Part shown: positions 1,522 to 64,000 of the stretch, one piece after another | Position numbering within the stretch: the stretch's first letter is position 1 | Layout of the letters: each line of letters begins with the position of its first letter | From: Anaeramoeba ignava BMAN | Lineage: Eukaryota > Protista > Anaeramoebae | Length of the DNA stretch: 64,000 nucleotides | Assembly (NCBI GenBank): GCA_028826165.1 | Contig: JAPDFW010000143.1 | Location: forward strand, 53,278-117,277 | Reading direction: 5' to 3' | Position numbers and translations under genes: made by a program | Notes under the pieces: generated by a model | What the model was told of the DNA's origin: nothing | What the model saw: only the letters and a program-made list of their open reading frames with translations | Databases searched by the model: none

Positions 1522-4500
1522 ATGACAACAGATCCATCTAAATTATTTGATAAAACAGATAAAATAGGAGAAGGAGTTTTAGGTTCTGTTTATAAAGGGT
1601 AAAAAAAATTAAATATAAAATTAATTAAATTAAAAATTATTTATAAAAATTTTCCTTTTATTTTTATTTGTTATTAATTCATTTAGAATTGGAAAAGATG
1701 CAAAAAAACCAATTGCACTTAAAGTTATTAATTTAACTGAAACAGAATCTAAAATTAATGATATTAAACATTTAGGAATTACAATAACAAAACAAGTAAA
1801 TCTTTTTTTAATAAAATTAAATATAAAATTATTTACAAAATTATTTATAAAATTATTTATAAAATTAAATATAAAATTATTTATAAAATTATTTATAAAA
1901 TTATTACAAAATTTAATATAAAATTAAATATTAAATTATTTATAAAATTATTATAAAATTATTACAAAAATTTAATACAAAAATTTAATATAAAATTATT
2001 TATAAAATTTAAATATAAAATTATTTATAAAATTTAAAATAAAATTATTTATAAAATCATTTATAAAATTATATATAAAATTAAATATAAAATTATTTAT
2101 AAAATTATTTATAAAATTATTTATAAAATTATTTATAAAATTATTTATAAAATTATTTATAAAATTATTTATAAAATTATTTTATAAAATTATTTATAAA
2201 ATTATTTATTAAATCATTTATAAAATTATTTATAAAATTATTTATAAAATTATTTATTAAATTATTTATAAAATTAAATATAAAATTATTTATTAAATTA
2301 TTTATAAATGTATTTATAAAATTAAATATAAAATTAAATATAAAATTAAATATAAAATTAAATATAAAATTATTTATAAAATTAAATATAAAATTATTTA
2401 TAAAATTAAATATAAAATTATTTATAAAATTAAATATAAAATTATTTATAAAATTATTTTATAAAATTATTTATAAAATTAATTATAAAATTATTTATAA
2501 AATTTAAATATAAAATTAAATATAAAATTATTTTATAAAATTAAATATAAAATTATTTATAAAATTATTTATTAAATTATTTATAAAATTTAATATAAAA
2601 TTAATTATAAAATTATTTATAAAATTATTTATAAATTTATTTATAAAATTATTACAAAATTAAATATAAAATTATTTATAAAATTATTTATAAAATTAAA
2701 TATAAAATTAATTATAAAAGTATTTATAAAATTAATTATAAAAGTATTTATAAAATTATTTATAAAATTATTTATTAAATTTAAAATAAAATTATTTATA
2801 AAATCATTTATAAAATTATTTATTAAATTATTTATAAAATTAATTATAAAATTATTTATAAAATTATTTATAAAATTATTTATAAAATTATTTATAAAAT
2901 TAATTATAAAATTTAAATATAAAATTAAATATAAAATTATTTATAAAATTAAATATAAAATTATTTATAAAATTATTTATTAAATTATTTATAAAATTTA
3001 ATATAAAATTAATTATAAAATTATTTATAAATGTATTTATAAAATTATTTATAAAATTATTTATAAAATTATTTATAAAATTATTTATTAAATTATTTAT
3101 AAAATTAAATATAAAATAATTTATAAAATTAAATATAAAATTAAATATAAAATTAAATATAAAATTATTTATAAAATTATTTATAAAATTAATTATAAAA
3201 TTATTTATAAAATTATTTATAAAATTATTTATAAAATTATTTACAAAATTATTTATAAAATTTAATATAAAATTATTAATAAAATTAAATATAAAATTAA
3301 ATATAAAATTAATTATAAAATTATATATAAAATTATTTATAAAATTATTTATAAAATTATTTATAAAATTAAATATAAAATTAAATATAAAATTAAATAT
3401 AAAATTATTTATAAAATTATTTATAAACTTATTTATAAAATTAAATATAAAATTATTTATAAAATTATTTATAAAATTATTTATAAAATTAATTATAAAA
3501 TTATATATAAAATTATTTATAAAATTATTTATAAAATTATTTATAAAATTATTTATAAAATTAATTATAAAATTATTTATAAAATTAAATATAAAATTAA
3601 TTATAAAATTAAATATAAAATTATTTATAAAATTATTTATAAAAATTAAATATTAAATTATTTATAAAATTATTTATAAAATTATTTATAAAATTATTTA
3701 TAAAATTATTTATAAATGTATTTATAAAATTAAATATTAAATTATTTATAAAATTATTTATAAAATTATTTATAAAATTATTTATAAAATTAATTATAAA
3801 ATTATTTATAAAATTAATTATAAAATTATTTATTAAATTATTTATAAAATTATTTATAAAATTAATTATTAAATTATTTATAAAATTATTTATAAAATTA
3901 TTAATATAATTAAATATAAAATTATTTATAAAATTTAATATAAAATTATTTATAAAATTTAATATAAAATTATTTATAAAATTAATTATTAAAATTATTT
4001 ATAAAATTAATTATAAAATTAAATATAAAATTATTTATAAAATTATTTATAAAATTATTTATAAAATTATTTATAAAATTATTTATAAAATTTAATATAA
4101 AAATAATTATAAAATTAAATATAAAATTATTTATAAAATTATTTATAAAATTATTTATAAAATTAAATATAAAATTAAATATAAAATTATTTATAAAATT
4201 ATTTATAAAATTATTTATAAAATTATTTATAAAATTATTTATAAAATTATTTATAAAATTATTTATAAAATTATTAATATAATTAAATATAAAATTATTA
4301 CAAAAATTTAATATAAAATTATTTATTAAATTATTTATAAAATTAATTATAAAATTATTTATAAAATTATTTATAAAATTATTTATTAAATTAAATATAA
4401 AATTAAATATAAAAATTATTTATAAAATTATTTATAAAATTATTTATAAAATTATTTATAAAATTAAATATAAAATTATTTATAAAATTATTTATTAAAT

Positions 4501-31199: not shown

Positions 31200-33535
31200 T
31201 AAATAATTTATTAAATTTTTAAAATAAATTTTTAAATCAATTTTTAAATCAATTTTTAAATCAATTTTTAAATCAATCTTTAAATCAATTTCCAAATCAA
31301 TTTCCAAATCAATTTCCAAATAAATTTCCAAATAAATTTTTAAATAAATTTTTAAATCAATTTTTAAATAAATTTTTAAATAAATTTTTAAATAAATTTT
31401 TAAATAAATTTTTAAATCAATTTTTAAATCAATTTCCAAATAAATTTTTAAATCAATTTTTAAATAAATTTTTTAAATCAATTTTTAAATAAATTTTAAA
31501 TCAATTTTTAAATAAATTTTTAAATTTTTAATTTTTAAATAAATTTTTAAATCAATTTTTAAATAAATTTTAAATTTTAAATCAATTAAATTTTTAAATC
31601 AATTTTTAAATAAATTTTTAAATAAATTTTAAATAAATTTTTAAATCAATTTTTAAATAAATTTTTAAATCAATTTTTAAATCAATTTTTAAATCAATTT
31701 TTAAATAAATTTTTAAATAAATTTTTAAATCAATTTCCAAATAAATTTCCAAATAAATTTTTAAATCAATTTTTAAATCAATTTTTAAATAAATTTTTAA
31801 ATCAATTTTTAAATAAATTTTTAAATAAATTTTTAAATCAATTTTTAAATAAATTTTTAAATAAATTTTTAAATCAATTTCCAAATAAATTTTTAAATAA
31901 ATTTTTAAATAAATTTTTAAATCAATTTCCAAATAAATTTTTAAATCAATTTTTAAATAAATCTTTAAATAAATTTTTAAATAAATTTTTAAATCAATTT
32001 TTAAATCAATTTTTAAATAAATTTCCAAATAAATTTTTAAATCAATTTTTAAATAAATTTTTAAATCAATTTTTAAATAAATTTCCAAATCAATTTTTAA
32101 ATCAATTTTATTCCACTTTTTTTAAATAAATTTTTAAATCAATTTTTAAATCAATTTTTAAATAAATTTTTAAATCAATTTTTAAATCAATTTTTAAATA
32201 AATTTTTAAATCAATTTTTAAATAAATTTTTAAATCAATTTTTAAATCAATTTTTAAATAAATTTTTAAATAAATTTTTAAATAAATTTTTAAATAAATT
32301 TTTAAATCAATTTCCAAATAAATTTTTAAATCAATTTTTAAATCAATTTTTAAATCAATTTTTAAATCAATTTTTAAATCAATTTTTAAATAAATTTTTA
32401 AATAAATTTTTAAATAAATTTTTAAATAAATTTTTAAATAAATTTTTAAATCAATTTTTAAATAAATTTTTAAATAAATTTTTAAATCAATTTTTAAATA
32501 AATTTTTAAATCAATTTTTAAATAAATTTTTAAATCAATTTTTAAATCAATTTTATTCCACTTTTTTTAAATAAATTTTTAAATCAATTTTTAAATAAAT
32601 TTTAAATAAATTTTTAAATCAATTTTTAAATCAATTTTTAAATCAATTTTTAAATCAATTTTTAAATAAATTTTTAAACCAATTTTTAAATCAATTTTTA
32701 AATCAATTTCCAAATAAATTTTTAAATCAATTTTTAAATAAATTTTTAAATAAATTTTTAAATAAATTTTTAAATAAATTTTTAAATAAATTTTTAAATT
32801 TTTAAATCAATTTTAAATCAATTTTAAATCAATTTTTAAATAAATTTTTAAATAAATTTTTAAATAAATTTTTAAATAATTTTTAAATCAATTTCAAATA
32901 AATTTTTAAATCAATTTTTAAATCAATTTTTAAATCAATTTTTAAATAAATTTTTAAATAAATTTTTAAATCCAATTTTAAATCAATTTTTAAATCCCAA
33001 TTTTTAAATCAATTTTTAAATAAATTTTAAATAAATTTTTAATAAATTTTTAATAAATTTTAAATAAATTTTTAATAAATTTTTAAATAAATTTTTAAAA
33101 TTTTCAAATAAATTTTTAAAAAATTTTAAATCCAATTTTTAAAAATAAAAATTTTTAAATAAATTTTTAAATAAATTTTTAATCAATTTCCAAATAAATT
33201 TCCAAATCAATTTTTTAAATAAATTTTTAAATAAATTTTATTCCACTTTTTTTAAATCAATTCTTAAATAAATTTTTAAATAAATTTTTAAATAAATTTT
33301 AAAATAAATTTCCAAATCAATTTTTAAATCAATTTTTAAATAAATTTTATTCCACTTTTTTTAAATCAATTTTTTCAAATTTTAAATAAATTTTTAAATA
33401 AATTTTTAAATCAATTTTTAAATCAATTTTTAAATCAATTTTTAAATAAATTTTATTCCACTTTTTTTAAATCAATTTTTAAATCAATTTTTTCAAATTT
33501 TAAATAAATTTTTAAATAAATTTTTTCAAATTTTA
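31200..33535. repeat. Intergenic 12-mer satellite (AAATCAATTTTT/AAATAAATTTTT)n between divergent genes
   Basis: Seen directly. It is the source of the LKIY/LKID ORFs. Confidence 0.9.
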
Positions 33536-33558
33536 AATTTCATTTTTCATTTTTAATA

Positions 33559-36500
33559 ATGGATTTTTGGTCTTCAGTTTCTAAAGGAAATTTAACAGTT
33601 TTAAAAACATTTTTAGAAAAAGATTCAACACTTTCTTCTTACAAATTTGTATAACAAAATATTTCTAAATAAAATTAAAATTAAAATTAAAAAAAAATAG
33701 TTTGTAAATTTTTATTATTCAAAAATTTTTAGTATTAAAAAATTCCATTTTAAAATTAGGGAATGACTGTTCTTGATTATTATTTAAAACATAATCATGA
33801 TTATCAAACAATTCAATATTTAATTGAAAAAAGAATCCCTTTAACTGTTTGATTAAAATTTAATTGAAAAAATTCAAAATTTAAAATTTAAAACTTTATT
33901 TATTAAAATTATTCTTTTATTTAGACTTTCAAAATCCATTTTTTCCTTTATTTTCATTCTTTACAAATATTTGATTTATTATTTGATTCAGAAAAACCAA
34001 CAAAAGAAGTAATTATTTTCGATATATTTTTAATTACAAAAAAAAACAAAAAAATTTTTGCTTTTTATTTTTTTCAAAAATTAAAAGAATTTAAATTCAC
34101 TTTTGGTTTTTCAATGCAAAAATCAAGCAAGTATAAAAGCAATTGAATATGTTTTAAAGAGAGGAGCTGATCCAAAAACAATAAATGTAAATCAAAATTC
34201 AAATCAAAATTTAATTTCATTTATTTTTTATTTTTGAAAAAAAAATTTTATTTAGAAATTTCTTTTGATTCATTTAATTAAAAATCAAAGAGATGATTTA
34301 ATGGATAAAATTAAATTATTAATTAATTATGGAGTTGATGTTAATCAAACAAATGAAGTAATGAATATTTTCTTGTTTTTATTCAATCCAAATTTTTAAT
34401 TAAAAAAAATATACAAAATTAGAATGTAAATTTTCATTTAAATTTTATAAATGAATTTTATAAATTAATTTTAAATTTTTTTTAGGGAGAAAAAGCTTTA
34501 AATTTTGCAATTTCTAAAAATTTTTATGATATAGCAAAATTACTATTAGATTCAGGAACAATTTTAACAATAGAAAATGTTGGAATTATTATTTTATTTT
34601 TATTATTTATTATTCTTATTATTTTTTATTCTTATTTTTTTAGATCTCTTCAATTTTTAATAATTTGAAAAATTTATCTTTTAAACTTGAGTTTATAAAA
34701 TTATTATGTGAAAAAATTTCAGATATTAATTCAGTTGATCAAGTAATTATTTATTTTTTGAATCCATAAATTTATTTTAACAAAATTAAATAGAAAGTAA
34801 AAACACAAATTTTTTATTATAATTCAATTAAAAATTTTATAAAAAAAAATTTAAAGGGAAATTCATTACTTCATACAATTTTAAAAAGTGAATCTAAAAA
34901 TATTGAGGAAATAAAAATTGTTCTTGAATCAGGAATTAATCCAAATTTACAAAATGAAGTATTTAAATTTAAAATTTAAAAATTAAAAATTTAAATTGAA
35001 TATTTTTTTTAATCAAAAAAAAAAGGATGTAAATTATAAGATAATTTTTAGATTGAATAAAAAAATAATTATATTATTTATTAGGGTTTAACTGCAATTC
35101 ATCTTGTATCTTCTGAATTTAATGAAGATTTATTCAGATTATTAATAAATTTTGGAGCAGAAATTTCAATTAAAAATGTAAATTAAAAATTCAATTAAAA
35201 ATTCAATTATCAAAATATTTATTTTTCGAATTAATTTTTAATTTGGATATAGAAAAATCAAGAAACTCCAATTGATATTCTCCTTTCTTCTTCAAAATTT
35301 ACTCAAATTTTTGATATTTTAGAAAAATTTAATTATAAATTTGATTTGAATCAAGTAAAAAAATATAAAAATATTATTTACTATTTATTATTTATTATTT
35401 GATTTAGAAACCTCCATTAATTTTCCGTTGCTTCGATTTTAATAAGGGAATTTTAATTGAAATTATTGAAAAATTAGTTAATTTTGGAGCAGATATTAAT
35501 GAAGTTCATGATGTATTTCAATTCATTTATTGATGATTTAATTTTAAATTTAATTTTAAATTTAAATTATTTTTTTTTTAGAAAAAATGCATTCTTAATT
35601 TTTTCCAAATTTTTAATGCAAATACCTCAATTTTAAGAAAACTTTTTGAACTTGGATTAGATTATGAAAAGATGGTTAATTCAAAAAAAAAAATTAGAAT
35701 GAAAATCAATTTAAAATGAAAATCAAACAAAAAAATCTTTTTTAATTTTTAGAAAGGAAAAACTTCTTTTACTTTATTTCCTTTTAATTATGAAGTAAAC
35801 ATTTCTTCAAATAAGAAAACTAAACTTGAAAATTTGGAGCTTTTACTTGAAAAGAAATTTCCACTTTATGATTCAAATTCAGTATTTTTTTTTCAATTTT
35901 GAATTTGAATTGGAAAATTGTTTTTATTTATAATTTTTTATTTTAGAACGAAAATGTTCAAGAATCAATAATTGAATTTGTTTTTAATTGTCAAAAACCA
36001 AAAGAGGCATTGGAACTTATTTTAAATTATGGAGCAAATCCAAATCTTTATTACAAAGTAAATAATTTTTCGATATCAAAAAAATTTAAGTACAATTTAT
36101 TGATTGATTTTGAAAATCAATCATTTTTTGAATAGAAAGAAACAATTTTCTCAAAAATTTTCCAAAGAGTTTCAAAAAAAGCAGAATTATTCAAAGTTTT
36201 AATTGATTATGGAATTGATATTGAAGCACAAAAAGCTGTATTAAATCAAAATATTTTAATTTAAAGGAAAATCAAAACTTATTAAATAAAATCATTTGGA
36301 AATAGAAAACAAATATGAAAAATAGAAGCAGTAAATATATTCAACTTATTGATAAATATGGAAATATTATGCAAGAATTTAGCGAATTATTTTCAAAAGG
36401 AGATTTGACAGATTTTAATATTCCAGTCGAAGATGGAACAATAAAAGCTCATAAATTAATTATTGAAATGAGAATTGGAAAAGAAAATATGACGAAATTT

Positions 36501-37031
36501 TTGGAAAATTGTCAACAAAAAAAACAAAAAGAAATTTATCTTTTAATCAACTTTATTTATTCAGGATTTGTTAATGAATTGAAATATTCTCAAGTGGAAA
36601 AATTATGTGAAGAATTTGGAATTGATTTTATTAAAAAGAAAGGAAGAAAAGGATTAATTGAAGATTTAGAAAAATTAAATGCAAATGAAGAAAGCAAAGA
36701 TTTTACAATTAAATTTGATGAAAAACATGAATTCAAACTTCATAAATTAGTTTTGATTGCAAGAACTGATCTATTTAGAAATATGTTTTTATCTGTTAAT
36801 GATTCAAGTAATTCTGTTCAAAATTATTCTTCTTTTTCTTTTAATTGTTTGAACTTGTTTTTCAAATATTTATATTCAGATTCTCTTACTTTGAATGTTT
36901 CTTTGTTTCTTTTGAGAGAGTTAAAAAATACTCCTATTTATTTTCAATTAAATTCTAATTCTTCTCTTGATCTTAAAATTCTTGAAATTCAATATTATTT
37001 ACGTTCAAAACTTGAGAAAAAACAAATTTAA
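33559..37031 (+). CDS. Ankyrin repeat-BTB-BTB protein: 15 repeat-sized exons, a terminal BTB exon and four 3-nt microexons
   Basis: Exons 33559-33648, 33760-33846, 33925-34008, 34088-34186, 34256-34357, 34486-34578, 34644-34742, 34857-34958, 35085-35177, 35253-35354, 35408-35512, 35582-35674, 35753-35881, 35947-36057, 36136-36237 and 36306-37031, all GT-AG and phase 0. The last exon has TDFNI..IKAHKLI and KDFTI..FKLHKLVLIARTDLFRNMF. Confidence 0.85.
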
Positions 37032-37074: not shown

Positions 37075-37935
37075 AAAATTTTATAAATGATTTTTAATTT
37101 TAAATTTAAATTTTAATTTTAATTTTAAATTAAATTTTAATTTTAATTTTAATTTAAATTTTAATTTTAATTTTAATTTTAAATTTGAATTTGATTTAAT
37201 TTTAATTTTAATTTTAATTTTAATTTTAATTTTAATTTTAATTTTAATTTTAATTTGAATTTGATTTAGAATTTAATTTTGAATTTGATTTGGGATTGAA
37301 TTTTAATTTTAATTTTAATTTTAATTTTAATTTTAATTTTGATTTTAATTTTAATTTTATAAATGAATTTTAATTTTAATTTTATAAATGAATTTTAATT
37401 TTAATTTTGAATTTGATTTGGGATTGAATTTTGAATTTGAATTTTGATTTGGAATTTAATTTTAATTTTAATTTTGATTTTAATTTTAATTTTAATTTTA
37501 ATTTTAATTTTAATTTTAATTTTAATTTGAATTTTAATTTAATTTTGATTTTAATTTTAATTTTAATTTTGAATTTTAATTTTAATTTTAATTTTAATTT
37601 TAATTTTAATTTTAATTTTAATTTGAATTTTAAATTTGATTTGGAATTTAATTTTAATTTTAATTTTGATTTAGAATTTAATTTTAATTTTAATTTTAAT
37701 TTTAATTTGAATTTTAATTTTTAATTTTAATTTTAATTTTAATTTTAATTTTAATTTTAATTTTAATTTTAATTTTAATTTTAATTTTAATTTTGATTTT
37801 GATTTTGATTTGGAATTGAATTTTAATTTTAATTTGATTTTTAATTTGAATTTTAATTCCTATTTGATTTAGAATTTAATTTTGATTTGGGATTGAATTT
37901 TGATTTGATTTGGGATTGAATTTTAATTTTAATTC
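37075..37935. repeat. (TTTTAA)n hexamer microsatellite between convergent genes
   Basis: Seen directly. Confidence 0.85.
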
Positions 37936-50495: not shown

Positions 50496-53400
50496 TTAAT
50501 TTTTTAAATCTTTTAAAATTAAATCAATAATTGAATTTTGATTTAATTGAAAATAATCTTTCAAATCATAAAATTCTTCTAAAATTATTTCTTTTTCTTT
50601 TTCTTTTTCTTTTTCTTTTTCAATATTATTAAATTTATCATGATAAAGAAAATAAATAAATTGATTAATTGTTTCAAATGATTTTCTTGAATAATCATGA
50701 ACTTGATTTGTTGAATCTTGAATATTTAATTCAAACATTCCTTTAAATAATTCACTTCGAATTATTAATATTAATTTATGAATTTTAATTTCTTTTTCTT
50801 CAACAATAATTTTAAAATCTTTGGTTTCATTTTCTTTATATAATTTTGATAAATCATTTATTATTCCTTTTCTTCCTTTTTTATTTTCAATCCAATTTGT
50901 TTCAATTCCAATTTCTTTAATAAAATTTTGGATAATTTCTTTTTCATTTTCATTTTCATTTTCATTTTCATTTTCATTTTCATTTTCATTTTCATTTTCA
51001 TTTTCATTTTCATTTTCATTTTCATTTTCATTTTCATTTTCATTTTCATTTTCATTTTCATTTTCATTTTCTTTTTCTTTTTCATTTTCAATTTGTTTTG
51101 AATTAAATTAAATTTTTCAATAAATTTATCAAAATTATAAAATCCAGTATAAATAAAATTTAAAATAATTTCAATTTCTTTTTGGTTTTGATAACAATTA
51201 TTAATAAATTTTTGTAAAATTAATTCATTATTATCAAATCTTGTTAATAATATTAATTTATGAACTTTAAATTTGAATAAATCATTTGATTGAATTATTA
51301 AATCTGAAAATTGATTATTTGATTTTAATAAATTATTCATATCTTCATTAATTGAATAAATTTGTGAAAATAATTGAATAAATTGTTTTGTGATTTGTTT
51401 TTGTTTCAAATCATAAATATTCATATCATTCATTAATAAAAATTTGATTATATTTTCATTTTGTTTTTTAATTGATATTGAAAGAATTGTTTCATTTTGA
51501 TTTGTTTTTGAATTAATATCAGCACCTTTGGAAATTAAATATTCAACAATTTGAATTGAATTGAATTGGCAAGCAAAATGTAAAGCAGTTTCATTTTGAT
51601 TATTTTTTGCATTAATATCAATTCCTTTGGAAATCAAATATTGAATAACTTTTAATGATAAATTATTTTGACAAGAATAATGTAAAGCTGTTTCATTTTC
51701 ATTTGTTTTTGCATTTATATCAATTCCTGATTCAATAAGAAATTTGATAATTTGAAAAAAATTGAATTGGCAAGCTAAATGTAAAGCTGTTTCATTTTCA
51801 TTATTTTTGGTATTAATATCAATTCCTTTGGAAACTAAATATTGAACAGTTTGAATTGAATTATTTCTACAAGCATAATGTAAAACAGTTTCATTTTCAT
51901 TTGTTTTTGCATTAATATCAATTCCTGATTCAAATAAATATTTAATAACTTGAATTGGTGAGTTATTTTCGCAAGCAAAATGTAAAGCTGTTTCATTTTC
52001 ATTTGTTTTTGCATTAATATCAATCCCTTTGGAAATCAAATATTCAATAGTTTGAATTGAATTATTTCTACAAGCAAAATGTAAAGCAGTTTGATTTTGA
52101 TTTGTTTTTTCATTAATATCAATTCCTTTTTCAATTAAATATTCAATAACTTCAAAGGGTGAATTATATTGACAAGCAATATGTAAGAGTGTTTGGTTTC
52201 GATTTGTTTTTTCATTGATATCAATTCCTTTGGAAATTAGATATTCAATAAGTTCAAATGATTTGTTTCTGCAAACATAATGTAAAACTGTTTGGTTTTG
52301 ATTTGTTTTTGCATTAATATCAATTCCTTTGGAAATCAAATATTCAATAACTTCAAATGATGGATTAAATTGGCAAGCAAAATGTAAAGCAGTTTCATTT
52401 CGTCTTGTTTTTTCATTAATATCAGCACCTTTGGAAACTAAATATTTAATAATTTGAATTGATGGATTATGTCTACAAACAAAATGTAAGACTGTTTCGT
52501 TTTGATTTGTTTTTGCATTAATATCAATTCCTTGTGAAATTAAATATTCAATAATTTCAAGTGATAGGCTATTTTTGCAAGCATAATGTAAAATTGTTTC
52601 ATTATAACCTGTTTTTGCATTAATATCAGCACCTTGTGAAATTAAATATTGAATAATTTCAAGTGTTGGATTATTTCTACAAATTGAATGTAAAACTGTT
52701 TCATTGTAATCTGTTTTTGCATTAATATCAGCACCTTTGGAAATTAAATATTGAATAACTTCAAATGAATTGGATTGACAAGCTGAAAGTAAAGGTGTTT
52801 CATCATAATTTGTTTTTGCATCAATATCAATTCCTTTGGAAATTAAATATTGAATAATTTCAAGTGATAAATTATTTCTACAAGCTGAATGTAAAACTGT
52901 TTCATTTTCATCAATTTTATCATGAATATCAATTCCTTGAGAAACTAAATATTCAATAACTTCAAGTGATGGATTATTTTGATTTTCAAAAACATAATGT
53001 AAAACTGTTTCATTATAATTTGTTTTTGAATAAATATCAACACCTTTGGAAATCAAATATTCAATAATTTCAATTGATGGATTATATCTACAAACATAAT
53101 GTAAAACTGTTTCATTCCATTTGTTTTTTTCATGAATATCAACACCTTTAGAAATTAAATATTCAATAACTTGAATTGATGGATTGTTTTCACAAACCAA
53201 ATGAATAAGTGTTTGATTCCATTTGGTTTTTTCATTAATATCAACACCTTTGGAAACTAAATATTCAATAACTTTGAACGATGGATTGTTTTGACAAACT
53301 AATTGTAAAGCTGTTTCATTATCACTTGTGATTGCATTTATATCAACACCTTTAGAAACCAAATATTTAATAACATCAACTGAATTCTTTTGGCAAGCAT

Positions 53401-54442
53401 AATGTAAGACTGTTTCGTTATCATTTGTAATTGAATTAATATCCAGACCTTTGGAAATTAAATATTCAATAACTTCGAGTGAATTCTTTTTACATGCAGA
53501 ATGTAAAATTGTTTCATTCCATATTGTTTTTGCATTAATATCAACTCCTTTGGAAATTAAATATTTAATAACTTCAAGTGAATTATTTTTGCATGCATAA
53601 TGTAATATTGTTTCATTCCTTTTGGTTTTTGCATTAATATTAATTCCTTTGGAAATTAAATATTCAATAACTTCAAGAGAATTATTTTTGCATGCATAAT
53701 GTAATAATGTTTTATGTCTATTTGTTTTATACTTAATATTAATTCCTTTAGATATTAAATATTTAATAACTTCAAGTGAATTCTTTTTACATGCATAATG
53801 TAAAATTGTTTGATTTTGTCTTGTTTTATCATTTATATTAATTCCTTTGGAAATTAAATATTCGATAACTTCAATTGAATTATTTTGACATGCAAAATGT
53901 AATATTGTTTCATTTGAATTTGTTTTTAAATTAATATTAATTCCTTTGGAAATTAAATATTCAATAATTTTAATTGAATTATATTCACATGCATAATGTA
54001 AAATTGTTTTATTTGAATTTGTTTTTTCATTTATATTAATTTTATTAGAAATTAAATATTCAATAATTTCAATTAATTCTTTTTCATTTTTTAAATATTT
54101 TATTAAATAATGAATAATTGTTTTTCCTTTTTTATCTTTTGAATTAATATTAATTCCTTTTGTTATTAATAATTTAATTATTTCAATTTTTGATTGATTT
54201 ATAATTGAAATTTGTAATAAATTTCTTCTTTTTTTATCTTTAAAATTAATATCATTATCATTATTATTATTAAATAATTCTGTTATTAAATATTCAATTA
54301 TTTCTTTGGAAACTTTTTGTTTTATTGAATATTTTATTATTTTCTTTTTATTTTTTTCTTCATTAATAATTTCTTTTATAATTTCTTTAATTTTTTCAAT
54401 TTCATTTTCTTTTATAATTTTATAAATTTTATTTTTATTCAT
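50496..54442 (-). CDS. Intronless ankyrin (about 28 repeats)-BTB-BTB protein, array copy A; frameshift near 51110
   Basis: The ORFs at 50861-54442 and 50496-50738 are collinear with the intact paralogs. There are small indels near 51105-51190. Confidence 0.85.
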
Positions 54443-54508
54443 TTTATTTTTATTTATTTTTTATTTTTTGAAATGAAAAAAAATGAAAAAATGGAAAAAA
54501 ATTTAAAA

Positions 54509-57500
54509 TTAATTTTTTAAATCTTTTAAAATTAAATCAATAATTGAATTTTGATTTAATTGAAAATAATCTTTTAAATCATAAAATTCTTCTAAAATAA
54601 TTTCTTTTTCTTTTTCTTTTTCAATATTATTAAATTTATCATGATAAAGAAAATAAATAAATTGATTAATTGTTTCAAATGATTTTCTTGAATAATCATG
54701 AACTTGATTTGAAGAATCTTGAATATTTAATTCAAACATTCCTTTAAATAATTCACTTCGAATTATTAATATTAATTTATGAATTTTAATTTCTTTTTCT
54801 TCAATAATAATTTTAAAATCTTTGGTTTTATTTTCTTTATATAATTTTGATAAATCATTTATTATTCCTTTTCTTCCTTTTTTATTTTCAATCCAATTTG
54901 AATCAATTCCAATTTCTTTAATAAACTTTTGGATAATTTCATTTTCATTTTCATTTTCATTTTCATTTTCATTTTGTTTTTCATTTTCATTTTCATTTTC
55001 ATTTTGTTTTGAATTAAATTTTTCAATAAATTTATCAAAATTATAAAATCCAGTATAAATAAAATTTAAAATAATTTCAATTTCTTTTTTTGGTTTTTGA
55101 TAACAATTATTAATAAATTTTTGTAAAGTTAATTCATTATTATCAAATCTTGTTAATAATATTAATTTATGAACTTTAAATTTGAATAAATCATTTGATT
55201 GAATTATTAAATCTGAAAATTGATTATTTGATTTTAATAAATTATTCATATCTTCATTAATTGAATAAATTTGTGAAAATAATTGAATAAATTGTTTTGT
55301 GATTTGTTTTTGTTTTAAATCATAAATATTCATATCATTCATTAATAAAAATTTGATTATATTTTCATTTTGTTTTTTAATTGATATTGAAAGAATTGTT
55401 TCATTTTGATTTGTTTTTGAATTAATATCAGCACCTTTTGAAATTAAATATTCAACAATTTGAATTGAATTGAATTGGCAAGCTAAATGCAAAGCAGTTT
55501 CATTTTGATTATTTTTTGCATTAATATCAATTCCTTTGGAAATCAAATATTGAATAACTTTTAATGATAAATTATTTTGGCAAGTATAATGTAAAGCTGT
55601 TTCATTTTGATTTGTTTTTGCATTTATATCAATTCCTTTGGAAATTAAATATTGGATAATTTGAAAAAAATTGAATTGGCAAGCTAAATGTAAAGCTGTT
55701 TCATTTTGATTATTTTTTGCATTAATATCAATTCCTTTGGAAACTAAATATTGAACAGTTTGAATTGAATTAAATCTGGAAATTAAATGTAAAGCAGTTT
55801 GATTTTCATCTGTTTTTGCATTAATATCAATTCCTTTGGAAATTAAATATTCAATAATTTCAAATGATAGATTATTTCGACAAGCAAAATGTAAAGCTGT
55901 TTCATTTTCATCTGCTTTTGCATTAATATCGATTCCTTTGGAAATTAAATATTCAATAGTTTGAATTGATGGATTATTTTCACAAACAAAATGTAAAGCT
56001 GTTTCATTGAAATTTGTTTTTGCATTAATATCAATTCCTTTGGAAATTAAATATTGAATAACTTCGAATGATGAATTATATTCACAAGCAATATGTAAGG
56101 CAGTTTGATTTCGTCTTGTTTTTGCATTAATATCAATTCCTTTGGAAATCAAATATTCAATAATTTCAAGTGATGGATTATGTCTACAAACAAAATGTAA
56201 AACTGTTTCATTTTGATTTGTTTTTGCATTAATATTAACACCTTTTTCAACTAAATATTCAATAATTTCAAGTGATGAATTATTTCTACAAGCAATATGT
56301 AAAGCTGTTTGATTTCTATTTGTTTTTTCATTAATATCAATTCCTTTGGAAATTAAATATTTAATAACTTCAAGTGATGTATTATTTTGGCAAACATAAT
56401 GTAAAGCTGTTTCATTTCCATTTGTTTTATCATTTATATCAATTCCTTTGGAAATCAAATATTCGATAACTTCAATTTGTGGATTATTTCTACAAGCTAA
56501 ATGTAAAACAGTTTCATTTTGATTTGTTTTTGCATTAATATCAATTCCTTTGGAAATTAAATATTTAATAACTTCAACTAAAGGTTTACTTCTACAAGCA
56601 TAATGTAAAGCTGTTTCATTTTGATTCGTTTTTGCATTAATATCAGCACCTTTGGAAATTAAATATTCAATAACTTGAAGTGAATCATTTTCACAAGCAT
56701 AATGTAAAATTGTTTCATCATAATTTGTTTTTGCATTAATATCAATTTCTTTGGAAATCAAATATTGAATAATTTCAAATGATGAATTATTTCTACAAGC
56801 TAAATGTAATATTGTTTCATTGTAATCAGATCGTGTATTAATATCAGCACCTTTGGAAATTAAATATTCAATAATTTCAGTTGATGAATTATTTCTACAA
56901 GCTGAAAGTAAAGGTGTTTCATCATAATTTGTTTTTGCATTAATATCAATTCCTTTTTCAACTAAATATTCAATAACTTCAAATGATGGATTATATTGAC
57001 AAACTATATGTAAAACTGTTTCATTTTGATTTGTTTTTGCATTAATATTGATTCCTTTTTCAACTAAATATTCAATAACTTCAATTGATGGATTATATCT
57101 ACAAGCTGAATGTAAAACTGCTTCATTCCATTTGGTTTTTTCATGAATATCAACACCTTTAGAAATTAAATATTCAATAACTTGAATTGATGGATTATTT
57201 TCACAAACCAAATGAATAAGTGTTCGATTCCATTTGTTTTTTTCATTTATATCAACACCTTTGGAAATCAAATATTCAATAACTTTAAATGATGGATTGT
57301 TTCTACAAGCAAAATGTAAAGTTGTTTCGTTATCACTTGTAATTGCATTTATATCAATTCCTTTGGAAACTAAATATTTAATAACATCAACTGAATTACT
57401 TTCACATGCATAATGTAAAACTGTTGCGTTATCACCTGTAATTGCATTTATATCAGCACCTTTGGAAATTAAATATTCAATAACTTTGAGTGAATTATTT

Positions 57501-58651
57501 TGGCAAGCATAATGTAAAGCTGTTTCATTCCATATTGTTTTTGAATTAATATCAATTCCTTTGGAAATTAAATATTTAATAACTTCGAGTGAATTGTTTT
57601 GACATGCATAATGTAAAATTGTTTTATTTGAATTTGTTTTTGAATTAATATCAATTCCTTTAGAAATTAAATATTTAATAACTTCAAGTGAATTGTTTTG
57701 ACATGCATAATGTAAAATTGTTTTGTGTCTATTTGTTTTTGCATTAATATCAATTCCTTTGGAAATTAAATATTTAATAACTTCAAGTGAATTCTTTTTA
57801 CATGCAGAATGTAATATTGTTTCATTTTTATTTGTTTTTGAATTAATATCAATTCCTTTAGAAATTAAATATTTAATAACTTCAAGAGAATTATTTTTAG
57901 ATGCATAATGTAATATTGTTTTGTATTGATTTGTTTTATAATTAATATTAATTCCTTTTGAAATTAAATATTCAATAACTTGAATTGAATTCTTTTTACA
58001 TGCATAATGTAAAACTGTTTCATTTTTATTTGTTTTTTCATTTATATTAATTCCTTTGGAAATTAAATATTCGATAACTTCAATTGAATTATTTTGACAT
58101 GCAAAATGTAATATTGTTTCATTTGAATTTGTTTTTAAATTAATATTAATTCCTTTGGATATTAAATATTCAATAATTTGAATTGAATTATATTCACATG
58201 CATAATGTAATATTGTTTTATTTGAATTTGTTTTTTCATTTATATTATTAATTTTATTAGAAATTAAATATTCAATAATTTCAATTAATTCTTTTTCATT
58301 TTTTAAATATTTTATTAAATAATGAATAATTGTTTTTCCTTTTTTATCTTTTGAATTAATATTAATTCCTTTTGTAATTAATAATTTAATTATTTCAATT
58401 TTTGATTGATTTATAATTGAAATTTGTAATAAATTTCTTCTTTTTTTATCTTTAAAATTAATATCATTATTATTATTATTAAATAATTCTGTTATTAAAT
58501 ATTCAATTATTTCTTTGGAAACTTTTTGTTTTATTGAATATTTTATTATTTTCTTTTTATCTTTTTCTTCATTAATAATTTCTTTTATAATTTCTTTAAT
58601 TTTTTCAATTTCATTTTCTTTTATAATTTTATAAATTTTATTTTTATTCAT
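54509..58651 (-). CDS. Intronless ankyrin (about 31 repeats)-BTB-BTB protein, array copy B
   Basis: 1380-aa ORF with GIDINAKTxxNETxLHxAC repeats, then SDLIIQ..FKVHKLIL and KDFKII..IKIHKLILIIRSELFKGMF. Confidence 0.92.
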   Translation of the reverse strand: MNKNKIYKIIKENEIEKIKEIIKEIINEEKDKKKIIKYSIKQKVSKEIIEYLITELFNNNNNDINFKDKKRRNLLQISIINQSKIEIIKLLITKGININSKDKKGKTIIHYLIKYLKNEKELIEIIEYLISNKINNINEKTNSNKTILHYACEYNSIQIIEYLISKGININLKTNSNETILHFACQNNSIEVIEYLISKGININEKTNKNETVLHYACKKNSIQVIEYLISKGININYKTNQYKTILHYASKNNSLEVIKYLISKGIDINSKTNKNETILHSACKKNSLEVIKYLISKGIDINAKTNRHKTILHYACQNNSLEVIKYLISKGIDINSKTNSNKTILHYACQNNSLEVIKYLISKGIDINSKTIWNETALHYACQNNSLKVIEYLISKGADINAITGDNATVLHYACESNSVDVIKYLVSKGIDINAITSDNETTLHFACRNNPSFKVIEYLISKGVDINEKNKWNRTLIHLVCENNPSIQVIEYLISKGVDIHEKTKWNEAVLHSACRYNPSIEVIEYLVEKGININAKTNQNETVLHIVCQYNPSFEVIEYLVEKGIDINAKTNYDETPLLSACRNNSSTEIIEYLISKGADINTRSDYNETILHLACRNNSSFEIIQYLISKEIDINAKTNYDETILHYACENDSLQVIEYLISKGADINAKTNQNETALHYACRSKPLVEVIKYLISKGIDINAKTNQNETVLHLACRNNPQIEVIEYLISKGIDINDKTNGNETALHYVCQNNTSLEVIKYLISKGIDINEKTNRNQTALHIACRNNSSLEIIEYLVEKGVNINAKTNQNETVLHFVCRHNPSLEIIEYLISKGIDINAKTRRNQTALHIACEYNSSFEVIQYLISKGIDINAKTNFNETALHFVCENNPSIQTIEYLISKGIDINAKADENETALHFACRNNLSFEIIEYLISKGIDINAKTDENQTALHLISRFNSIQTVQYLVSKGIDINAKNNQNETALHLACQFNFFQIIQYLISKGIDINAKTNQNETALHYTCQNNLSLKVIQYLISKGIDINAKNNQNETALHLACQFNSIQIVEYLISKGADINSKTNQNETILSISIKKQNENIIKFLLMNDMNIYDLKQKQITKQFIQLFSQIYSINEDMNNLLKSNNQFSDLIIQSNDLFKFKVHKLILLTRFDNNELTLQKFINNCYQKPKKEIEIILNFIYTGFYNFDKFIEKFNSKQNENENENEKQNENENENENENEIIQKFIKEIGIDSNWIENKKGRKGIINDLSKLYKENKTKDFKIIIEEKEIKIHKLILIIRSELFKGMFELNIQDSSNQVHDYSRKSFETINQFIYFLYHDKFNNIEKEKEKEIILEEFYDLKDYFQLNQNSIIDLILKDLKN

Positions 58652-58713
58652 TTTATATTTATTTCTTTTTATTTTTTGAAATGAAAAAAAATGAAAAAAT
58701 GAAAAATGAAAAA

Positions 58714-61700
58714 TTAATTTTTTAAATCTTTTAAAATTAAATCAATAATTGAATTTTGATTTAATTGGAAATAATCTTTTAAATCATAAAATTCTTCTAA
58801 AATAATTTCTTTTTCTTTTTCTTTTTCTTTTTCAATATTATTAAATTTATCATGATAAAGGAAATAAATAAATTGATTAATTGTTTCAAATGATTTTCTT
58901 GAATAATCATGAACTTGATTTGTTGAATCTTGAATATTTAATTCAAACATTCCTTTAAATAATTCACTTCGAATTATTAATATTAATTTATGAATTTTAA
59001 TTTCTTTTTCTTCAACAATTATTTTAAAATCTTTGGTTTCATTTTCTTTATATAATTTTGATAAATCATTTATTATTCCTTTTCTTCCTTTTTTATTTTC
59101 AATCCAATTTGAATCAATTCCAATTTCTTTAATAAAATTTTGGATAATTTCTTTTTCATTTTCATTTTCATTTTCATTTTCATTTTCATTTTCATTTTCA
59201 TTTTCATTTTCATTTTCATTTTCATTTTCATTTTCATTTTCATTTTCATTTTCATTTTCATTTTCAATTTGTTTTGAATTAAATTTATCAATAAATTTAT
59301 CAAAATTATAAAATCCAGTATAAATAAAATTTAAAATAATTTCAATTTCTTTTTTTGGTTTTTGATAACAATTATTAATAAATTTTTGTAAAGTTAATTC
59401 ATTATTATCAAATCTTGTTAATAATATTAATTTATGAACTTTAAATTTAAATAAATCATTTGATTGAATTATTAAATCTGAAAATTGATTATTTGATTTT
59501 AATAAATTATTCATATCTTCATTAATTGAATAAATTTGTGGAATTAAATCAATAAATTCTTGTGTGATATATTCTTTTTTTAAATCATCAATATTCGCAT
59601 CATTCATTAATAAAAATTTGATTATATTTTCATTTTGTTTTTTAATTGATATTGAAAGAATTGTTTCATTTTGATTTGTTTTTGAATTAATATCAGCACC
59701 TTTGGAAATTAAATATTTAACAATTTGAATTGATGAATTCCTTTCAGAAGCGTAATGTAAAGCAGTTTCATTTTGATTTGTTTTTGCATTTATATCAATT
59801 CCTTTGGAAATCAAATATTCAACAAATTCAAATAAATTGCTTTGATATTTCAAAGTAAAATGTAAAGCTGTTTCATTGTGACTTGTTTTTACATTAATAT
59901 CAATTCCTGATTCAATAAGAAATTTCGTAATATCAAATGATTTTGGAGGTTGATATTGATAAATAATATGCAAAGCTGATTGGTTGTTGTAAACTTTAGC
60001 ATTAATATCAATTCCTTTGGAAACAAGTAATTTTATAACTTCAAACGAATTTGGATTTTTATTTTGGCAAACAAAATGTAAAGCAGTTTGATTTCTTTTT
60101 GTTTTTGCATTAATATCAATTCCTTTTTCTATGAGACATTTGATCAATTCAATTGAGTTTTTATTTTGATTTTGACAAGCTAAATGTAAAGCAGTTTGAT
60201 TTTCATTTGTTTTTGCATTAATATCAATTCCTTTTTCTATAAGACATTTGATCAATTCGTTCGAATTTTCTTGATTTTTATTTTTGCACAAACAATGCAA
60301 AGCTGTTTCTTCTCCATATGAAGTTTTTGCATTTATATCAATTCCTGATTCAAGAAGAAATTTGATAATTTGGATTGAATTCGAATTAAGATTTCCGTTT
60401 TCACAAAAAAGATGAAGAGGCGTTTTTCGATTGAATGTTAAATAACCAGATGGCACTTTCCTGAAATAAATGAGATGATCGTGATCTGAAGTTTGATTTG
60501 AGGTTTTGTTTATGTGAGTTTTTAATTCCATTTCTTTTGAAACAAGAAATTGGATAACTTCAAATAAATTTTCATTTTGGTTTTGATTTTGATGTTGACA
60601 AGCAAAATGCAAAGGTGTAGCTTGATTATATCTTGTTTGAGCAGCGATATCAGCTCCTTTTGAAGCAAGAAATTTGATGATTTCAAGTGAGTTTTCATTT
60701 ATGTTACCACAAGCATGATGCAAAGGTGTTTCATTATTTATTGTTTGAGAATTAATATCAATTCCTTTGAAAACTAGATATTCAATAACTTCAAGTGGTA
60801 AATTAGTTTGACAAGCAAAATGTAAAGCTGTTTCTTTATTGTAATTGGTTTTTGCATTAATATCAATTCCTTTTTCAACTAAATATTGTATAACTTCAAG
60901 AGAGGAATTATTTTGGCATGCATAATGTAGTGCTGTTTTACCTTCAATTGTTTTTGCATTAATATCAATTCCTTTTGAGATTAAATATTTAGCAATTTCA
61001 ATTGATGGATTGTTTTGGCATGCTAAATGTAAAGCTGTTTCTTCTCGATATGAAATTGTTGAATTAATATCGCTTCCTTTTTCAACAAGAAGTTTAACAA
61101 TTTCCAACGAATTAAAGAAAGAAGCGATATGTAAAGCTATTTGATTTTGATTTGTTGTTGCATGTATATCAATTCCTTTTTCAACAAGAATTTTAACAAT
61201 TTCAATTGAATTAGGATTTTTACAAGCTATATGTAAAACTGTTTCATTAAAATCTGATTTCACATTAATATCAATTCCTTTTTCAATAAGAAATTTAATA
61301 ATTTCATTTGAATTTTTATGGCTAAAAGCATAATGTAAAGCTGTTTCATTCCATTTTGTTTTTGCATTAATATCAACACCTTTGGAAATTAAATATTGAA
61401 TAACTTTTAGTGTATTTTGAAATTTGCAAGCATAATGTAAAGCTGTTTCATTTCCATTTGTTTTTGAATTAATATCAATTCCTTTGGAAATCAAATATTC
61501 AATAATTTCAAGTGGTTGTTTGTATTGGCAAACAAGATGTAAAACTGTTTCATGATTTATATTTTTTGAATTAATATCAATTCCTTTTGAAATGAAATAT
61601 TCAATGATTTCATTTGGTTTTTGATATTGGCAAACAAGATGTAAAGGCGTTTCATTAAATAAAGTTGTTAAAGTAGGATCAGCTCCTTTTGAAACAAGAA

Positions 61701-62277
61701 ATTTGATCATCTCAATTGATTTTTGGTATTTCAAAACAAAATATAAAGGAGATAATTTTGCATCTGCTTGTGAATTAATATCAGATCCATTTTCAATAAG
61801 AAATTTAATAACTTCAAATGAGTTATATTGACATGCCAAATGTAATGCTATTTTTTGATCAATTCTTTTGATATTAACATCAATTCCTTTTTCAACTAAA
61901 TATTTAATAACTTCAAATGAATGATATTGGCAAGCAAAATGTAAAGCTGTTTCATTTTCTTCTGTTTTTGAATTAATATCAATTCCTTTTTTAATTAATA
62001 ATTTAATTATTTCAATTTTTGATTGATTTATAATTGAAATTTGTAATAAATTTCTTCTTTTTTTATCTTTAAAATTAATATCATTATCATTATTATTATT
62101 ATTATTAAATAATTTTGTTATTAAATATTCAATTATTTCTTTGGAAACTTTTTGTTTTATTGAATATTTTATTATTTTCTTTTTATTTTTTTCTTCATTA
62201 ATAATTTCTTTTATAATTTCTTTAATTTTTTCAATTTCATTTTCTTTTATAATTTTATAAATTTTATTTTTATTCAT
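58714..62277 (-). CDS. Intronless ankyrin (about 24 repeats)-BTB-BTB protein, array copy C with a divergent core
   Basis: 1187-aa ORF with the same termini as copies A and B but a distinct central repeat set. Confidence 0.92.
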   Translation of the reverse strand: MNKNKIYKIIKENEIEKIKEIIKEIINEEKNKKKIIKYSIKQKVSKEIIEYLITKLFNNNNNNDNDINFKDKKRRNLLQISIINQSKIEIIKLLIKKGIDINSKTEENETALHFACQYHSFEVIKYLVEKGIDVNIKRIDQKIALHLACQYNSFEVIKFLIENGSDINSQADAKLSPLYFVLKYQKSIEMIKFLVSKGADPTLTTLFNETPLHLVCQYQKPNEIIEYFISKGIDINSKNINHETVLHLVCQYKQPLEIIEYLISKGIDINSKTNGNETALHYACKFQNTLKVIQYLISKGVDINAKTKWNETALHYAFSHKNSNEIIKFLIEKGIDINVKSDFNETVLHIACKNPNSIEIVKILVEKGIDIHATTNQNQIALHIASFFNSLEIVKLLVEKGSDINSTISYREETALHLACQNNPSIEIAKYLISKGIDINAKTIEGKTALHYACQNNSSLEVIQYLVEKGIDINAKTNYNKETALHFACQTNLPLEVIEYLVFKGIDINSQTINNETPLHHACGNINENSLEIIKFLASKGADIAAQTRYNQATPLHFACQHQNQNQNENLFEVIQFLVSKEMELKTHINKTSNQTSDHDHLIYFRKVPSGYLTFNRKTPLHLFCENGNLNSNSIQIIKFLLESGIDINAKTSYGEETALHCLCKNKNQENSNELIKCLIEKGIDINAKTNENQTALHLACQNQNKNSIELIKCLIEKGIDINAKTKRNQTALHFVCQNKNPNSFEVIKLLVSKGIDINAKVYNNQSALHIIYQYQPPKSFDITKFLIESGIDINVKTSHNETALHFTLKYQSNLFEFVEYLISKGIDINAKTNQNETALHYASERNSSIQIVKYLISKGADINSKTNQNETILSISIKKQNENIIKFLLMNDANIDDLKKEYITQEFIDLIPQIYSINEDMNNLLKSNNQFSDLIIQSNDLFKFKVHKLILLTRFDNNELTLQKFINNCYQKPKKEIEIILNFIYTGFYNFDKFIDKFNSKQIENENENENENENENENENENENENENENENENENENEKEIIQNFIKEIGIDSNWIENKKGRKGIINDLSKLYKENETKDFKIIVEEKEIKIHKLILIIRSELFKGMFELNIQDSTNQVHDYSRKSFETINQFIYFLYHDKFNNIEKEKEKEKEIILEEFYDLKDYFQLNQNSIIDLILKDLKN

Positions 62278-62339
62278 TTTATTTTTATTTATTTTTATTT
62301 TTTGAAATGAAAAAAAATGAAAAAATGAAAAATTTAAAA

Positions 62340-64000
62340 TTAATTTTTTAAATCTTTTAAAATTAAATCAATAATTGAATTTTGATTTAATTGAAAATAA
62401 TCTTTTAAATCATAAAATTCTTCTAAAATAATTTCTTTTTCTTTTTCTTTTTCTTTTTCTTTTTCAATATTATTAAATTTATCATGATAAAGGAAATAAA
62501 TAAATTGATTAATTGTTTCAAATGATTTTCTTGAATAATCATGAACTTGATTTGATGAATCTTGAATATTTAATTCAAACATTCCTTTAAATAATTCACT
62601 TCGAATTATTAATATTAATTTATGAATTTTAATTTCTTTTTCTTCAATAATTATTTTAAAATCTTTGGTTTCATTTTCTTTATATAATTTTGATAAATCA
62701 TTTATTATTCCTTTTCTTCCTTTTTTAGTTTCAATCCAATCTGTTTCAATTCCAATTTCTTTAATAAAATTTTGGATAATTTCATTTTCATTTTCATTTT
62801 CATTTTCATTTTCATTTTCAATTTGTTTTGAATTAAATTTATCAATAAATTTATCAAAATTATAAAATCCAGTATAAATAAAATTTAAAATAATTTCAAT
62901 TTCTTTTTTTGGCTTTTGATAACAATTATTAATAAATTTTTGTAAAGTTAATTCATTATTATCAAATCTTGTTAATAATATTAATTTATGAACTTTAAAT
63001 TTAAATAAATCATTTGATTGAATTATTAAATCTGAAAATTGATTATTTGATTTTAATAAATTATTCATATCTTCATTAATTGAATAAATTTGTGAAAATA
63101 ATTGAATAAATTGTTTTGTGATTTGTTTTTGTTTTAAATCATAAATATTCATATCATTCATTAATAAAAATTTGATTATATTTTCATTTTGTTTTTTAAT
63201 TGATATTGAAAGAATTGTTTCATTTTGATTTGTTTTTGAATTAATATCAGCACCTTTGGAAATTAAATATTCAACAATTTGAATTGAATTGAATTGGCAA
63301 GCAAAATGTAAAACAGTTTCATTTTGATTATTTTTTGCATTAATATCAATTCCTTTAGAAATTAAATATTGAATAACTTTTAATGAAGGATTGTTTTGGC
63401 AAGCTAAATGTAAAGCTGTTTCATTTTCATTTGTTTTTGCATTTATATCAATTCCTTTGGAAATCAAATATTGGATAATTTGAAAAAAATTGAATCGGCA
63501 AGCTAAATGTAAAGCAGTTTCATTTTGATTATTTTTTGCATTAATATCAATTCCTTTGGAAACTAAATATTGAACAGTTTGAATTGAATTGAATCTGGTT
63601 GCAAAATGCAAAGCAGTTTGACTTCGTCTTGTTTTTGCATTAATATCAATTTCTTTTTCAATTAAATATTGAATAATTTCAATTGGTGAGTTATTTTGGC
63701 AAGCATAATGTAAAGCTGTTTCGTTCTCATTTGTTTTTGAATAAATATCAATTCCTTTGGAAATTAAATATTCAACAATTTCAAGAGAATTATTTCGACA
63801 AGCAAAATGTAAAACTGTTTCATTTCGATTTGTTTTTGCATTAATATCAATTCCTTTTTCAATTAAATATTCAATAACTTCAAAGGGTGAATTATATTGA
63901 CAAACAATATGTAAGAGTGTTTGTTTTTGATTTGCTTTTTCATTAATATTAACACCTTTTTCAACTAAATATTGAATAATTTCAAATGGTTTGTTTCTGC
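62340..64000 (-). CDS. Ankyrin-BTB-BTB protein, array copy D, 5' part beyond the window
   Basis: Ankyrin-coding sequence continues to the window edge. The C-terminus is near-identical to the other copies. Confidence 0.88.
   Translation of the reverse strand, partial: RNKPFEIIQYLVEKGVNINEKANQKQTLLHIVCQYNSPFEVIEYLIEKGIDINAKTNRNETVLHFACRNNSLEIVEYLISKGIDIYSKTNENETALHYACQNNSPIEIIQYLIEKEIDINAKTRRSQTALHFATRFNSIQTVQYLVSKGIDINAKNNQNETALHLACRFNFFQIIQYLISKGIDINAKTNENETALHLACQNNPSLKVIQYLISKGIDINAKNNQNETVLHFACQFNSIQIVEYLISKGADINSKTNQNETILSISIKKQNENIIKFLLMNDMNIYDLKQKQITKQFIQLFSQIYSINEDMNNLLKSNNQFSDLIIQSNDLFKFKVHKLILLTRFDNNELTLQKFINNCYQKPKKEIEIILNFIYTGFYNFDKFIDKFNSKQIENENENENENENEIIQNFIKEIGIETDWIETKKGRKGIINDLSKLYKENETKDFKIIIEEKEIKIHKLILIIRSELFKGMFELNIQDSSNQVHDYSRKSFETINQFIYFLYHDKFNNIEKEKEKEKEKEIILEEFYDLKDYFQLNQNSIIDLILKDLKN

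What the first reader, a model, noticed from the sequence alone, without database searches (positions are those of the whole stretch)
33701..35028. Four single-codon (3-nt) microexons each supply the beta-hairpin tip residue of an ankyrin repeat
Seen: 11 introns of this gene are 53-79 nt, but four are 111-128 nt. Each long one has a central AG-NNN-GTAAA: TTT at 33701-33703, AAT at 34423-34425, AAA at 34794-34796 and GAT at 35026-35028. These split the long introns into normal-sized pairs (52+56, 65+60, 51+60, 67+56 nt). Including the codon restores the ankyrin spacing N-x-x-D/N-x-x-G-x-T/S-x-L: DVNQTNE[N]GEKAL, DINSVDQ[K]GNSLLH, NPNLQNE[D]GLTAIH, and SYKF[F]GMTVL. Without it each repeat is one residue short. 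Established: beta-hairpin tip residues are ankyrin target-contact positions (randomised in DARPins), and gene predictors miss 3-nt exons. Inference: a recurring one-amino-acid exon at a binding position could be skipped in frame or evolve independently, tuning specificity.
Basis: partly seen in the sequence, partly recalled or inferred. Interest (0 to 1): 0.92.

Follow-up and report, generated by a model that had tools for sequence, protein, structure and literature searches.

The report
One-codon exons in ankyrin loops
In the anaerobic amoeba Anaeramoeba ignava, this ankyrin-BTB gene has four exons only three bases long, each adding one amino acid at a binding-loop tip; an RNA-derived contig carries two of them, and about 4,000 such one-codon exons appear to exist in the genome, unseen by the public annotation of the genes I checked.

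Summary
Observation confirmed. The gene (33559-37031, +) has 20 exons and 19 GT-AG introns of 51-79 nt, all phase 0, encoding a 742-aa ankyrin-BTB protein of Anaeramoeba ignava. The public protein is this model minus exactly the four microexon residues. One spliced contig of a public run (depth 2.9) carries three extra bases at both junction 3 and junction 4; no direct-skip joint was listed. Junctions 1-2 are not covered by RNA. A 51%-identical paralog keeps all four sites with different codons. The layout is family-wide: 134 hidden 3-nt units in 144 annotated introns (other sizes 0-7), placed at ankyrin positions 2 and 3, often as consecutive pairs or longer runs. Genome-wide a strict motif gives 519 hits at 3 nt against 49 and 46 at 2 and 4 nt (rough estimate 4,000), and A. 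flamelloides shows the same layout. Best reading: one-codon exons included by default through short-intron splicing. This scan noted the layout before on other DNA of this genome, without RNA. No paper found.

The parts
33559..37031 (+). Ankyrin-repeat + C-terminal BTB gene, 20 exons, 19 phase-0 GT-AG introns, 742 aa
   Evidence: open frame; public 738-aa protein equals model minus four residues; Pfam Ank, BTB; five introns seen as GT..AG joints
33701..33703 (+). 3-nt exon 1 (TTT, Phe31) between introns 33649-33700 and 33704-33759
   Evidence: same site holds CAT in both paralogs; no RNA joint listed
34423..34425 (+). 3-nt exon 2 (AAT, Asn156) between introns 34358-34422 and 34426-34485
   Evidence: paralogs GAT; no RNA joint listed
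34794..34796 (+). 3-nt exon 3 (AAA, Lys221) between introns 34743-34793 and 34797-34856
   Evidence: record 2 has 3 extra letters here; AAA fits the single mismatch; paralogs AAC and AAT
35026..35028 (+). 3-nt exon 4 (GAT, Asp256) between introns 34959-35025 and 35029-35084
   Evidence: record 2 leaves 3 unplaced letters (record 171-173) between 34958 and 35085; paralogs GAT and AAT
34256..34357 (+). One-repeat ankyrin exon (34 aa) upstream of unit 2
   Evidence: record 1
34857..34958 (+). One-repeat ankyrin exon (34 aa) between units 3 and 4
   Evidence: record 2
35085..35177 (+). One-repeat ankyrin exon (31 aa) downstream of unit 4
   Evidence: record 2; (PF00023, E 4.5e-4)
36306..37031 (+). 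Last exon, BTB/POZ region
   Evidence: PF00651, E 1.6e-15; records 3-5

Best explanation
These are real one-codon exons that are included by default. The A. ignava spliceosome removes introns of about 50-90 nt one at a time by pairing a donor with the nearest suitable acceptor (intron definition; inferred). Once one flanking intron is gone, the three bases are simply the end of a long exon, so no recognition of a 3-nt exon is needed (inferred). The Anaeramoeba ankyrin repeat carries up to three phase-0 introns at adjacent codon boundaries of the beta-turn (1|2, 2|3, 3|4; shown). With all three, residues 2 and 3 are separate exons; this gene has 2|3 and 3|4 at four hairpins, so residue 3 alone is an exon. 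The layout predates the ignava-flamelloides split and spread by duplication of symmetric repeat exons and of genes (inferred). The product is a normal-length ankyrin-BTB protein, probably a Cullin3 substrate adaptor (from general knowledge of BTB proteins, not tested).
For: Spliced contig with three extra bases at junctions 3 and 4 and no skip joint listed. Four sites kept in 51%-identical paralogs while codons and introns differ. 134 3-nt units against 0-7 of any other size in 144 annotated introns, 142 of them phase 0. A size-blind parse picks 3 nt in 124 of 132 cases and leaves sub-introns of median 71 nt. No stop codon among 120 units; 9.3% of bulk intron triplets are stops. Hairpin spacer is 7 in 331 of 382 non-Anaeramoeba ankyrin matches and never 5, but 5 in 48 annotated Anaeramoeba repeats; predicted units turn 9 of 13 into 7. 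Sites cluster at 3|4, 2|3 and 1|2 (50, 46, 37). Genome-wide 519 at 3 nt, 49 at 2 nt, 46 at 4 nt; pairs one intron apart 841 against 25. A. flamelloides: 48 at 3 nt against 1-12.
Against: RNA support is one contig at depth 2.9 from a run whose type is not on record, and the inserted letters were not printed; units 1 and 2 have no RNA joint. Contigs drop rare variants, so the inclusion level is unknown. Long introns can be spliced in this organism (a roughly 460-nt intron is absent from transcript-derived P0013), so skipping is mechanically possible. Splicing order and intron definition were not tested.
Confidence: 0.8

Rival explanations
1. The units are real exons but are regulated or stochastically skipped cassettes, giving ankyrin isoforms with hairpins shorter by one or two residues and so different binding.
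For: All exons are phase 0, so any skip keeps the frame; the residues sit at library-randomised contact positions; the families are large; schistosome micro-exon genes use alternative splicing for variability (PMC10526429).
Against: The one informative contig includes both units and no skip joint is listed; unit splice sites score as well as ordinary ones (mean 11.9 against 11.7); losing a residue from the four-residue beta-turn should disturb its conserved hydrogen bonding (inference from PMC4308713).
Confidence: 0.1
2. The intron-plus-codon unit is a DNA-level cassette: unequal crossing-over or conversion between AT-rich introns adds, removes or swaps single residues, so loops evolve one codon at a time. 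This is compatible with default inclusion and concerns origin and use rather than splicing.
For: Excess only at 3 nt, none at 6 nt (2472, 408 and 463 for 3, 4 and 6 nt); hairpins extended by runs of 4-9 units; 351 matches to three units in a row (some are satellites); arrays elsewhere with near-identical introns and different codons.
Against: In this gene the 19 introns are no more alike than shuffled ones, and only a few similar pairs occur in other genes; most hairpins keep the canonical length; no strain or allele data.
Confidence: 0.3
3. The units are chance or vestigial splice-like motifs inside long introns, and the public annotation (hairpins one or two residues short) is right.
For: The public model, made in a project that had RNA-seq, omits them; the genome is about 81% A+T.
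Against: Three extra bases in RNA; sharp 3-nt peak with flat controls; conservation in paralogs and in a second species; restored canonical spacing.
Confidence: 0.03

Closest known systems
Schistosoma micro-exon genes (MEGs; PMC10526429)
   Same: Very short exons down to 3 nt, several per gene, proposed source of protein variability.
   Different: MEGs are secreted proteins built largely from 3-81 nt exons with introns up to 5 kb. Here exons are almost only 3 nt, sit at fixed positions of a folded repeat domain, lie between 50-80 nt introns, and no skipping was seen.
Plant small microexons, 1-15 nt (Yu et al. 2022, PMC8831610)
   Same: Missed by annotation, conserved position and phase within gene families, lost by loss of flanking introns.
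   Different: 2,398 across ten species (about 100-235 coding ones per species quoted), most often 9 nt, all three phases. Here an estimated 4,000 in one 43-Mb genome, one size, phase 0 in the genes mapped, often consecutive.
Vertebrate neural microexons under Srrm3/Srrm4 control (abstracts of PMC12626424, PMC4317164)
   Same: Frame-preserving microexons that add residues to proteins (on interaction surfaces, from my own knowledge).
   Different: Those are switch-like, tissue-regulated cassettes in long-intron genes; no regulation is shown here.
One-repeat-per-exon ankyrin genes and designed ankyrin libraries (PMC4308713)
   Same: 33-residue repeat, consensus D-x-x-G-x-T-P-L-H; positions 2 and 3 are among the randomised ones.
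   Different: Here positions 2 and 3 are separate exons; the other randomised positions (5, 10, 13, 33) are not.

Membership tests
Microexon (internal exon of 15 nt or less) | Size and canonical AG / GT flanks with spliceable introns on both sides | tested here: met
Microexon (internal exon of 15 nt or less) | Present in spliced RNA: units 3 and 4 | tested here: met
   record 2: three extra letters at each junction; letters inferred, not printed; one contig, depth 2.9
Microexon (internal exon of 15 nt or less) | Present in spliced RNA: units 1 and 2 | tested here: inconclusive
   no joint listed; no transcript-derived protein fragment found
Ankyrin-BTB protein | Ankyrin repeats followed by a BTB/POZ domain | tested here: met
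Schistosome-type micro-exon gene (MEG) | Coding region made mostly of microexons with long introns | tested here: not met
   12 of 2229 coding bases are in microexons; introns 51-79 nt
Schistosome-type micro-exon gene (MEG) | Secreted protein with N-terminal signal peptide | not tested
   no predictor run; the protein starts with an ankyrin-like repeat and ends in BTB
Schistosome-type micro-exon gene (MEG) | Isoform variety through alternative splicing | tested here: inconclusive
   no skip joint in contigs, which drop rare variants
Regulated neural-type microexon | Condition- or cell-type-specific inclusion by a dedicated regulator | not testable with these tools
   only one contig-level run was available

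The most novel reading that the evidence does not exclude
Anaeramoeba uses intron-flanked single codons as a diversification device: the contact residues of hundreds of ankyrin repeats in ankyrin-BTB adaptors (and longer loops or other gene families) can be added, dropped or exchanged one amino acid at a time, by recombination between flanking introns or by skipping, giving a natural library of binders at single-residue resolution.
Probability: 0.2. Interest if true: 0.93.

Novelty: new variant of a known kind. Interest (0 to 1): 0.8.

Why it matters
Thousands of 3-nt exons, many consecutive, would be an extreme exon-size distribution for a eukaryote, and I found no paper describing it. It offers a natural system for asking how a spliceosome handles exons too small to be recognised on their own, and how introns come to sit at adjacent codon boundaries. 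In practice the public Anaeramoeba ankyrin proteins checked here are one or two residues short at many hairpins, which distorts structure prediction and family analysis. If the layout also speeds change at contact residues, it would be exon shuffling at the level of single amino acids.

Tried and rejected
Alternative acceptor three bases upstream (NAGNAG type) at junction 3: rejected, the bases before 34854 are TA, and the RNA piece has one mismatch where genomic AAG would give none. Donor read-through of GTA at junctions 3 or 4: would need a non-GT donor. The tool's reversed-pattern control is not composition-matched (reversed, the motif contains the common ATG), so I used 2-, 4- and 6-nt spacers as controls instead. 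Transcript-derived (EukProt) proteins as a second RNA test: none found for this gene or for ten other mapped genes; the two that exist map to stretches without units. Recent duplication of introns within this gene: not seen. Single-sequence fold of the annotated residues 118-290: helical repeats, mean pLDDT 65.7, too weak to judge the hairpins. Paper searches for ankyrin or Anaeramoeba microexons found nothing relevant; the genome paper has no passage on ankyrins or small exons.

Full report
Gene and observation. The window lies in a 42.8-Mb, 147-contig genome identified as Anaeramoeba ignava by the source name of the encoded protein. Joining at GT-AG sites gives one open frame from 33559 to 37031: 20 exons, 19 introns of 51-79 nt, every intron in phase 0, 742 residues. 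The public protein P0001 has 738 residues and equals my model with exactly those four residues removed, so the public annotation treats each pair as one intron of 111-128 nt. Shuffling the four long introns gives a central unit with probability 0.001-0.011 each.

RNA evidence. One public run holds the stretch, as contigs, type not on record. It shows GT..AG joints at five predicted introns, so it is spliced RNA. Record 2 (278 letters, depth 2.9) has 64 letters ending at 34741, then letters 65-170 laid on 34853-34958 with one mismatch, then three unplaced letters, then 174-266 on 35085-35177. The upstream exon ends at 34742 and the next starts at 34857, so three extra letters lie between them; A plus AAA against the genomic AAAG gives exactly one mismatch, whereas the skipped form would give 72 in that register. 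AAA is one of nine triplets that fit, and the only one supplied by canonical splice sites in that intron. The three letters at junction 4 were not printed, so GAT is inferred. No direct-skip joint was listed, but two joints in masked repeats were dropped and contigs lose rare variants, so skipping is not excluded. Units 1 and 2 have no listed joint. The run may belong to the same study as the assembly.

Conservation. Two paralogs at about 51% identity (P0151, P0152) have units at the same four hairpins, with codons CAT, GAT, AAC or AAT, and GAT or AAT, in introns that differ in length and sequence. Exact spliced mapping of 16 public BTB-family proteins gave 144 introns, 142 in phase 0, many of 120-580 nt. 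Inside them the motif AG-N(k)-GT[A/T] occurs 134 times for k=3 and 0-7 times for every other k up to 18. A size-blind chain parse chose 3 nt in 124 of 132 cases and left sub-introns of median 71 nt. None of 120 non-redundant units is a stop codon. The spacer between the G-A-D-V-N-like motif and T-P-L-H is 7 in 331 of 382 non-Anaeramoeba matches and never 5; annotated Anaeramoeba proteins show 48 at 5 and 55 at 7, and predicted units move 9 of 13 mapped cases to 7. In ankyrin numbering the introns fall at 3|4, 2|3 and 1|2 (50, 46, 37 cases); the commonest pattern has all three (28), making residues 2 and 3 two separate exons; this gene shows the 2|3 plus 3|4 pattern. Positions 2 and 3 are among those randomised in a designed ankyrin library and lie in the binding beta-turn (PMC4308713).

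Scale. Genome-wide, a strict motif with 12 A/T bases each side gives 519 hits at 3 nt, 49 at 2 nt and 46 at 4 nt; a looser one gives 2472, 408 and 463 at 3, 4 and 6 nt. Two units one intron apart occur 841 times against 25 for 4-nt spacers, three in a row 351 times, some of them satellites. Correcting for the share of mapped units that each motif catches gives 3,800-4,200; this is rough, since sensitivity was measured in one family and some hits lie in tandem arrays of unknown coding status. Six A. flamelloides ankyrin-BTB loci map fully with phase-0 introns and show 48 units at 3 nt against 1-12 at other sizes, in chains about 100 nt apart. The layout is therefore probably older than the split of the two species; A. 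pumila has lost nearly all introns (bioRxiv 10.64898/2026.04.11.717937).

Mechanism. Shown: canonical sites of ordinary strength, unit-length introns on both sides, three extra bases in one RNA contig at two of four junctions, fixed position in the repeat, conservation. Inferred: intron-by-intron removal by intron definition makes inclusion the default; phase-0 symmetry let repeat exons duplicate with their introns; partial patterns such as a 6-nt two-codon unit, or one residue fused to a neighbouring exon, reflect gain or loss of single introns around retained codons. Open: why the excess is at 3 nt only and why some loops are runs of 4-9 units. Duplication of an intron-plus-codon unit would explain this, and arrays with near-identical introns and different codons fit it, but this gene shows no trace of recent intron duplication.

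Comparison. It works like other frame-preserving microexons and meets the definition of one; it is not a schistosome-type micro-exon gene. Three-base exons are known (PMC10526429 gives 3-81 nt; PMC8831610 covers 1-15 nt in plants). New are the number, the single size, the consecutive runs and the fixed place in a repeat domain. No paper on this in Anaeramoeba was found in the searchable library. Earlier notes of this scan describe the same layout in other genes of this genome and say no RNA could be checked; I saw them after forming my reading and do not count them as evidence.

Limits and steps left out. As the operators required, the joined spliced model was not sent to any search or folding tool; I searched exon by exon by reference or with the stored public protein, and used the joined model only inside scripts. 

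Verdict. Observation confirmed; interpretation partly supported; new variant of a known kind; interest 0.8.

Noticed in passing
L040 (gene of P0009), annotated introns of 480 and 775 nt: Each is tiled by consecutive 3-nt units (6-7 and up to 9), implying extended ankyrin loops encoded codon by codon.
   Followed up: partly
L045 4200-7700 (+): Ankyrin-BTB gene in which nearly every repeat is one long exon plus two one-codon exons, more than 20 units.
   Followed up: partly
G000 C1:409305-413133 (-) and C1:1057919-1073177 (-); also C2:7155-9499, C6:23271-25916: Long runs of 3-nt units about 60-90 nt apart; in the two C1 arrays the introns are closely similar while codons differ. Gene family and coding status unknown.
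   Followed up: no
G000 C35:350926-360260, C21:67780-71107, C13:156688-157415: Units with a shared flank recurring at about 180-nt steps or multiples, suggesting another repeat-protein family with one one-codon exon per repeat.
   Followed up: no
L031 and L051 (paralogs P0151, P0152): A 12-nt exon (four residues) splits the intron that corresponds to window intron 34187-34255, where the window gene has a single 69-nt intron.
   Followed up: partly
window 50861-63611 (-): Four long uninterrupted reading frames in tandem; the one scanned is ankyrin-rich. Intronless and microexon-rich ankyrin genes coexist in the genome.
   Followed up: no
L052-L057 (A. flamelloides): Units keep about 100-nt spacing near exon ends while single sub-introns have grown to 2-7 kb; one annotated intron of P0071 hides a whole 93-nt ankyrin exon.
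   Followed up: partly
window 32500-33540 and 37090-37600: The gene is bracketed by low-complexity A/T satellite-like DNA.
   Followed up: no
L024 (P0020) and L012 (P0045): Introns outside ankyrin regions include phases 1 and 2, so the phase-0 rule seems tied to the repeats rather than the genome (few cases, one mapping incomplete).
   Followed up: partly
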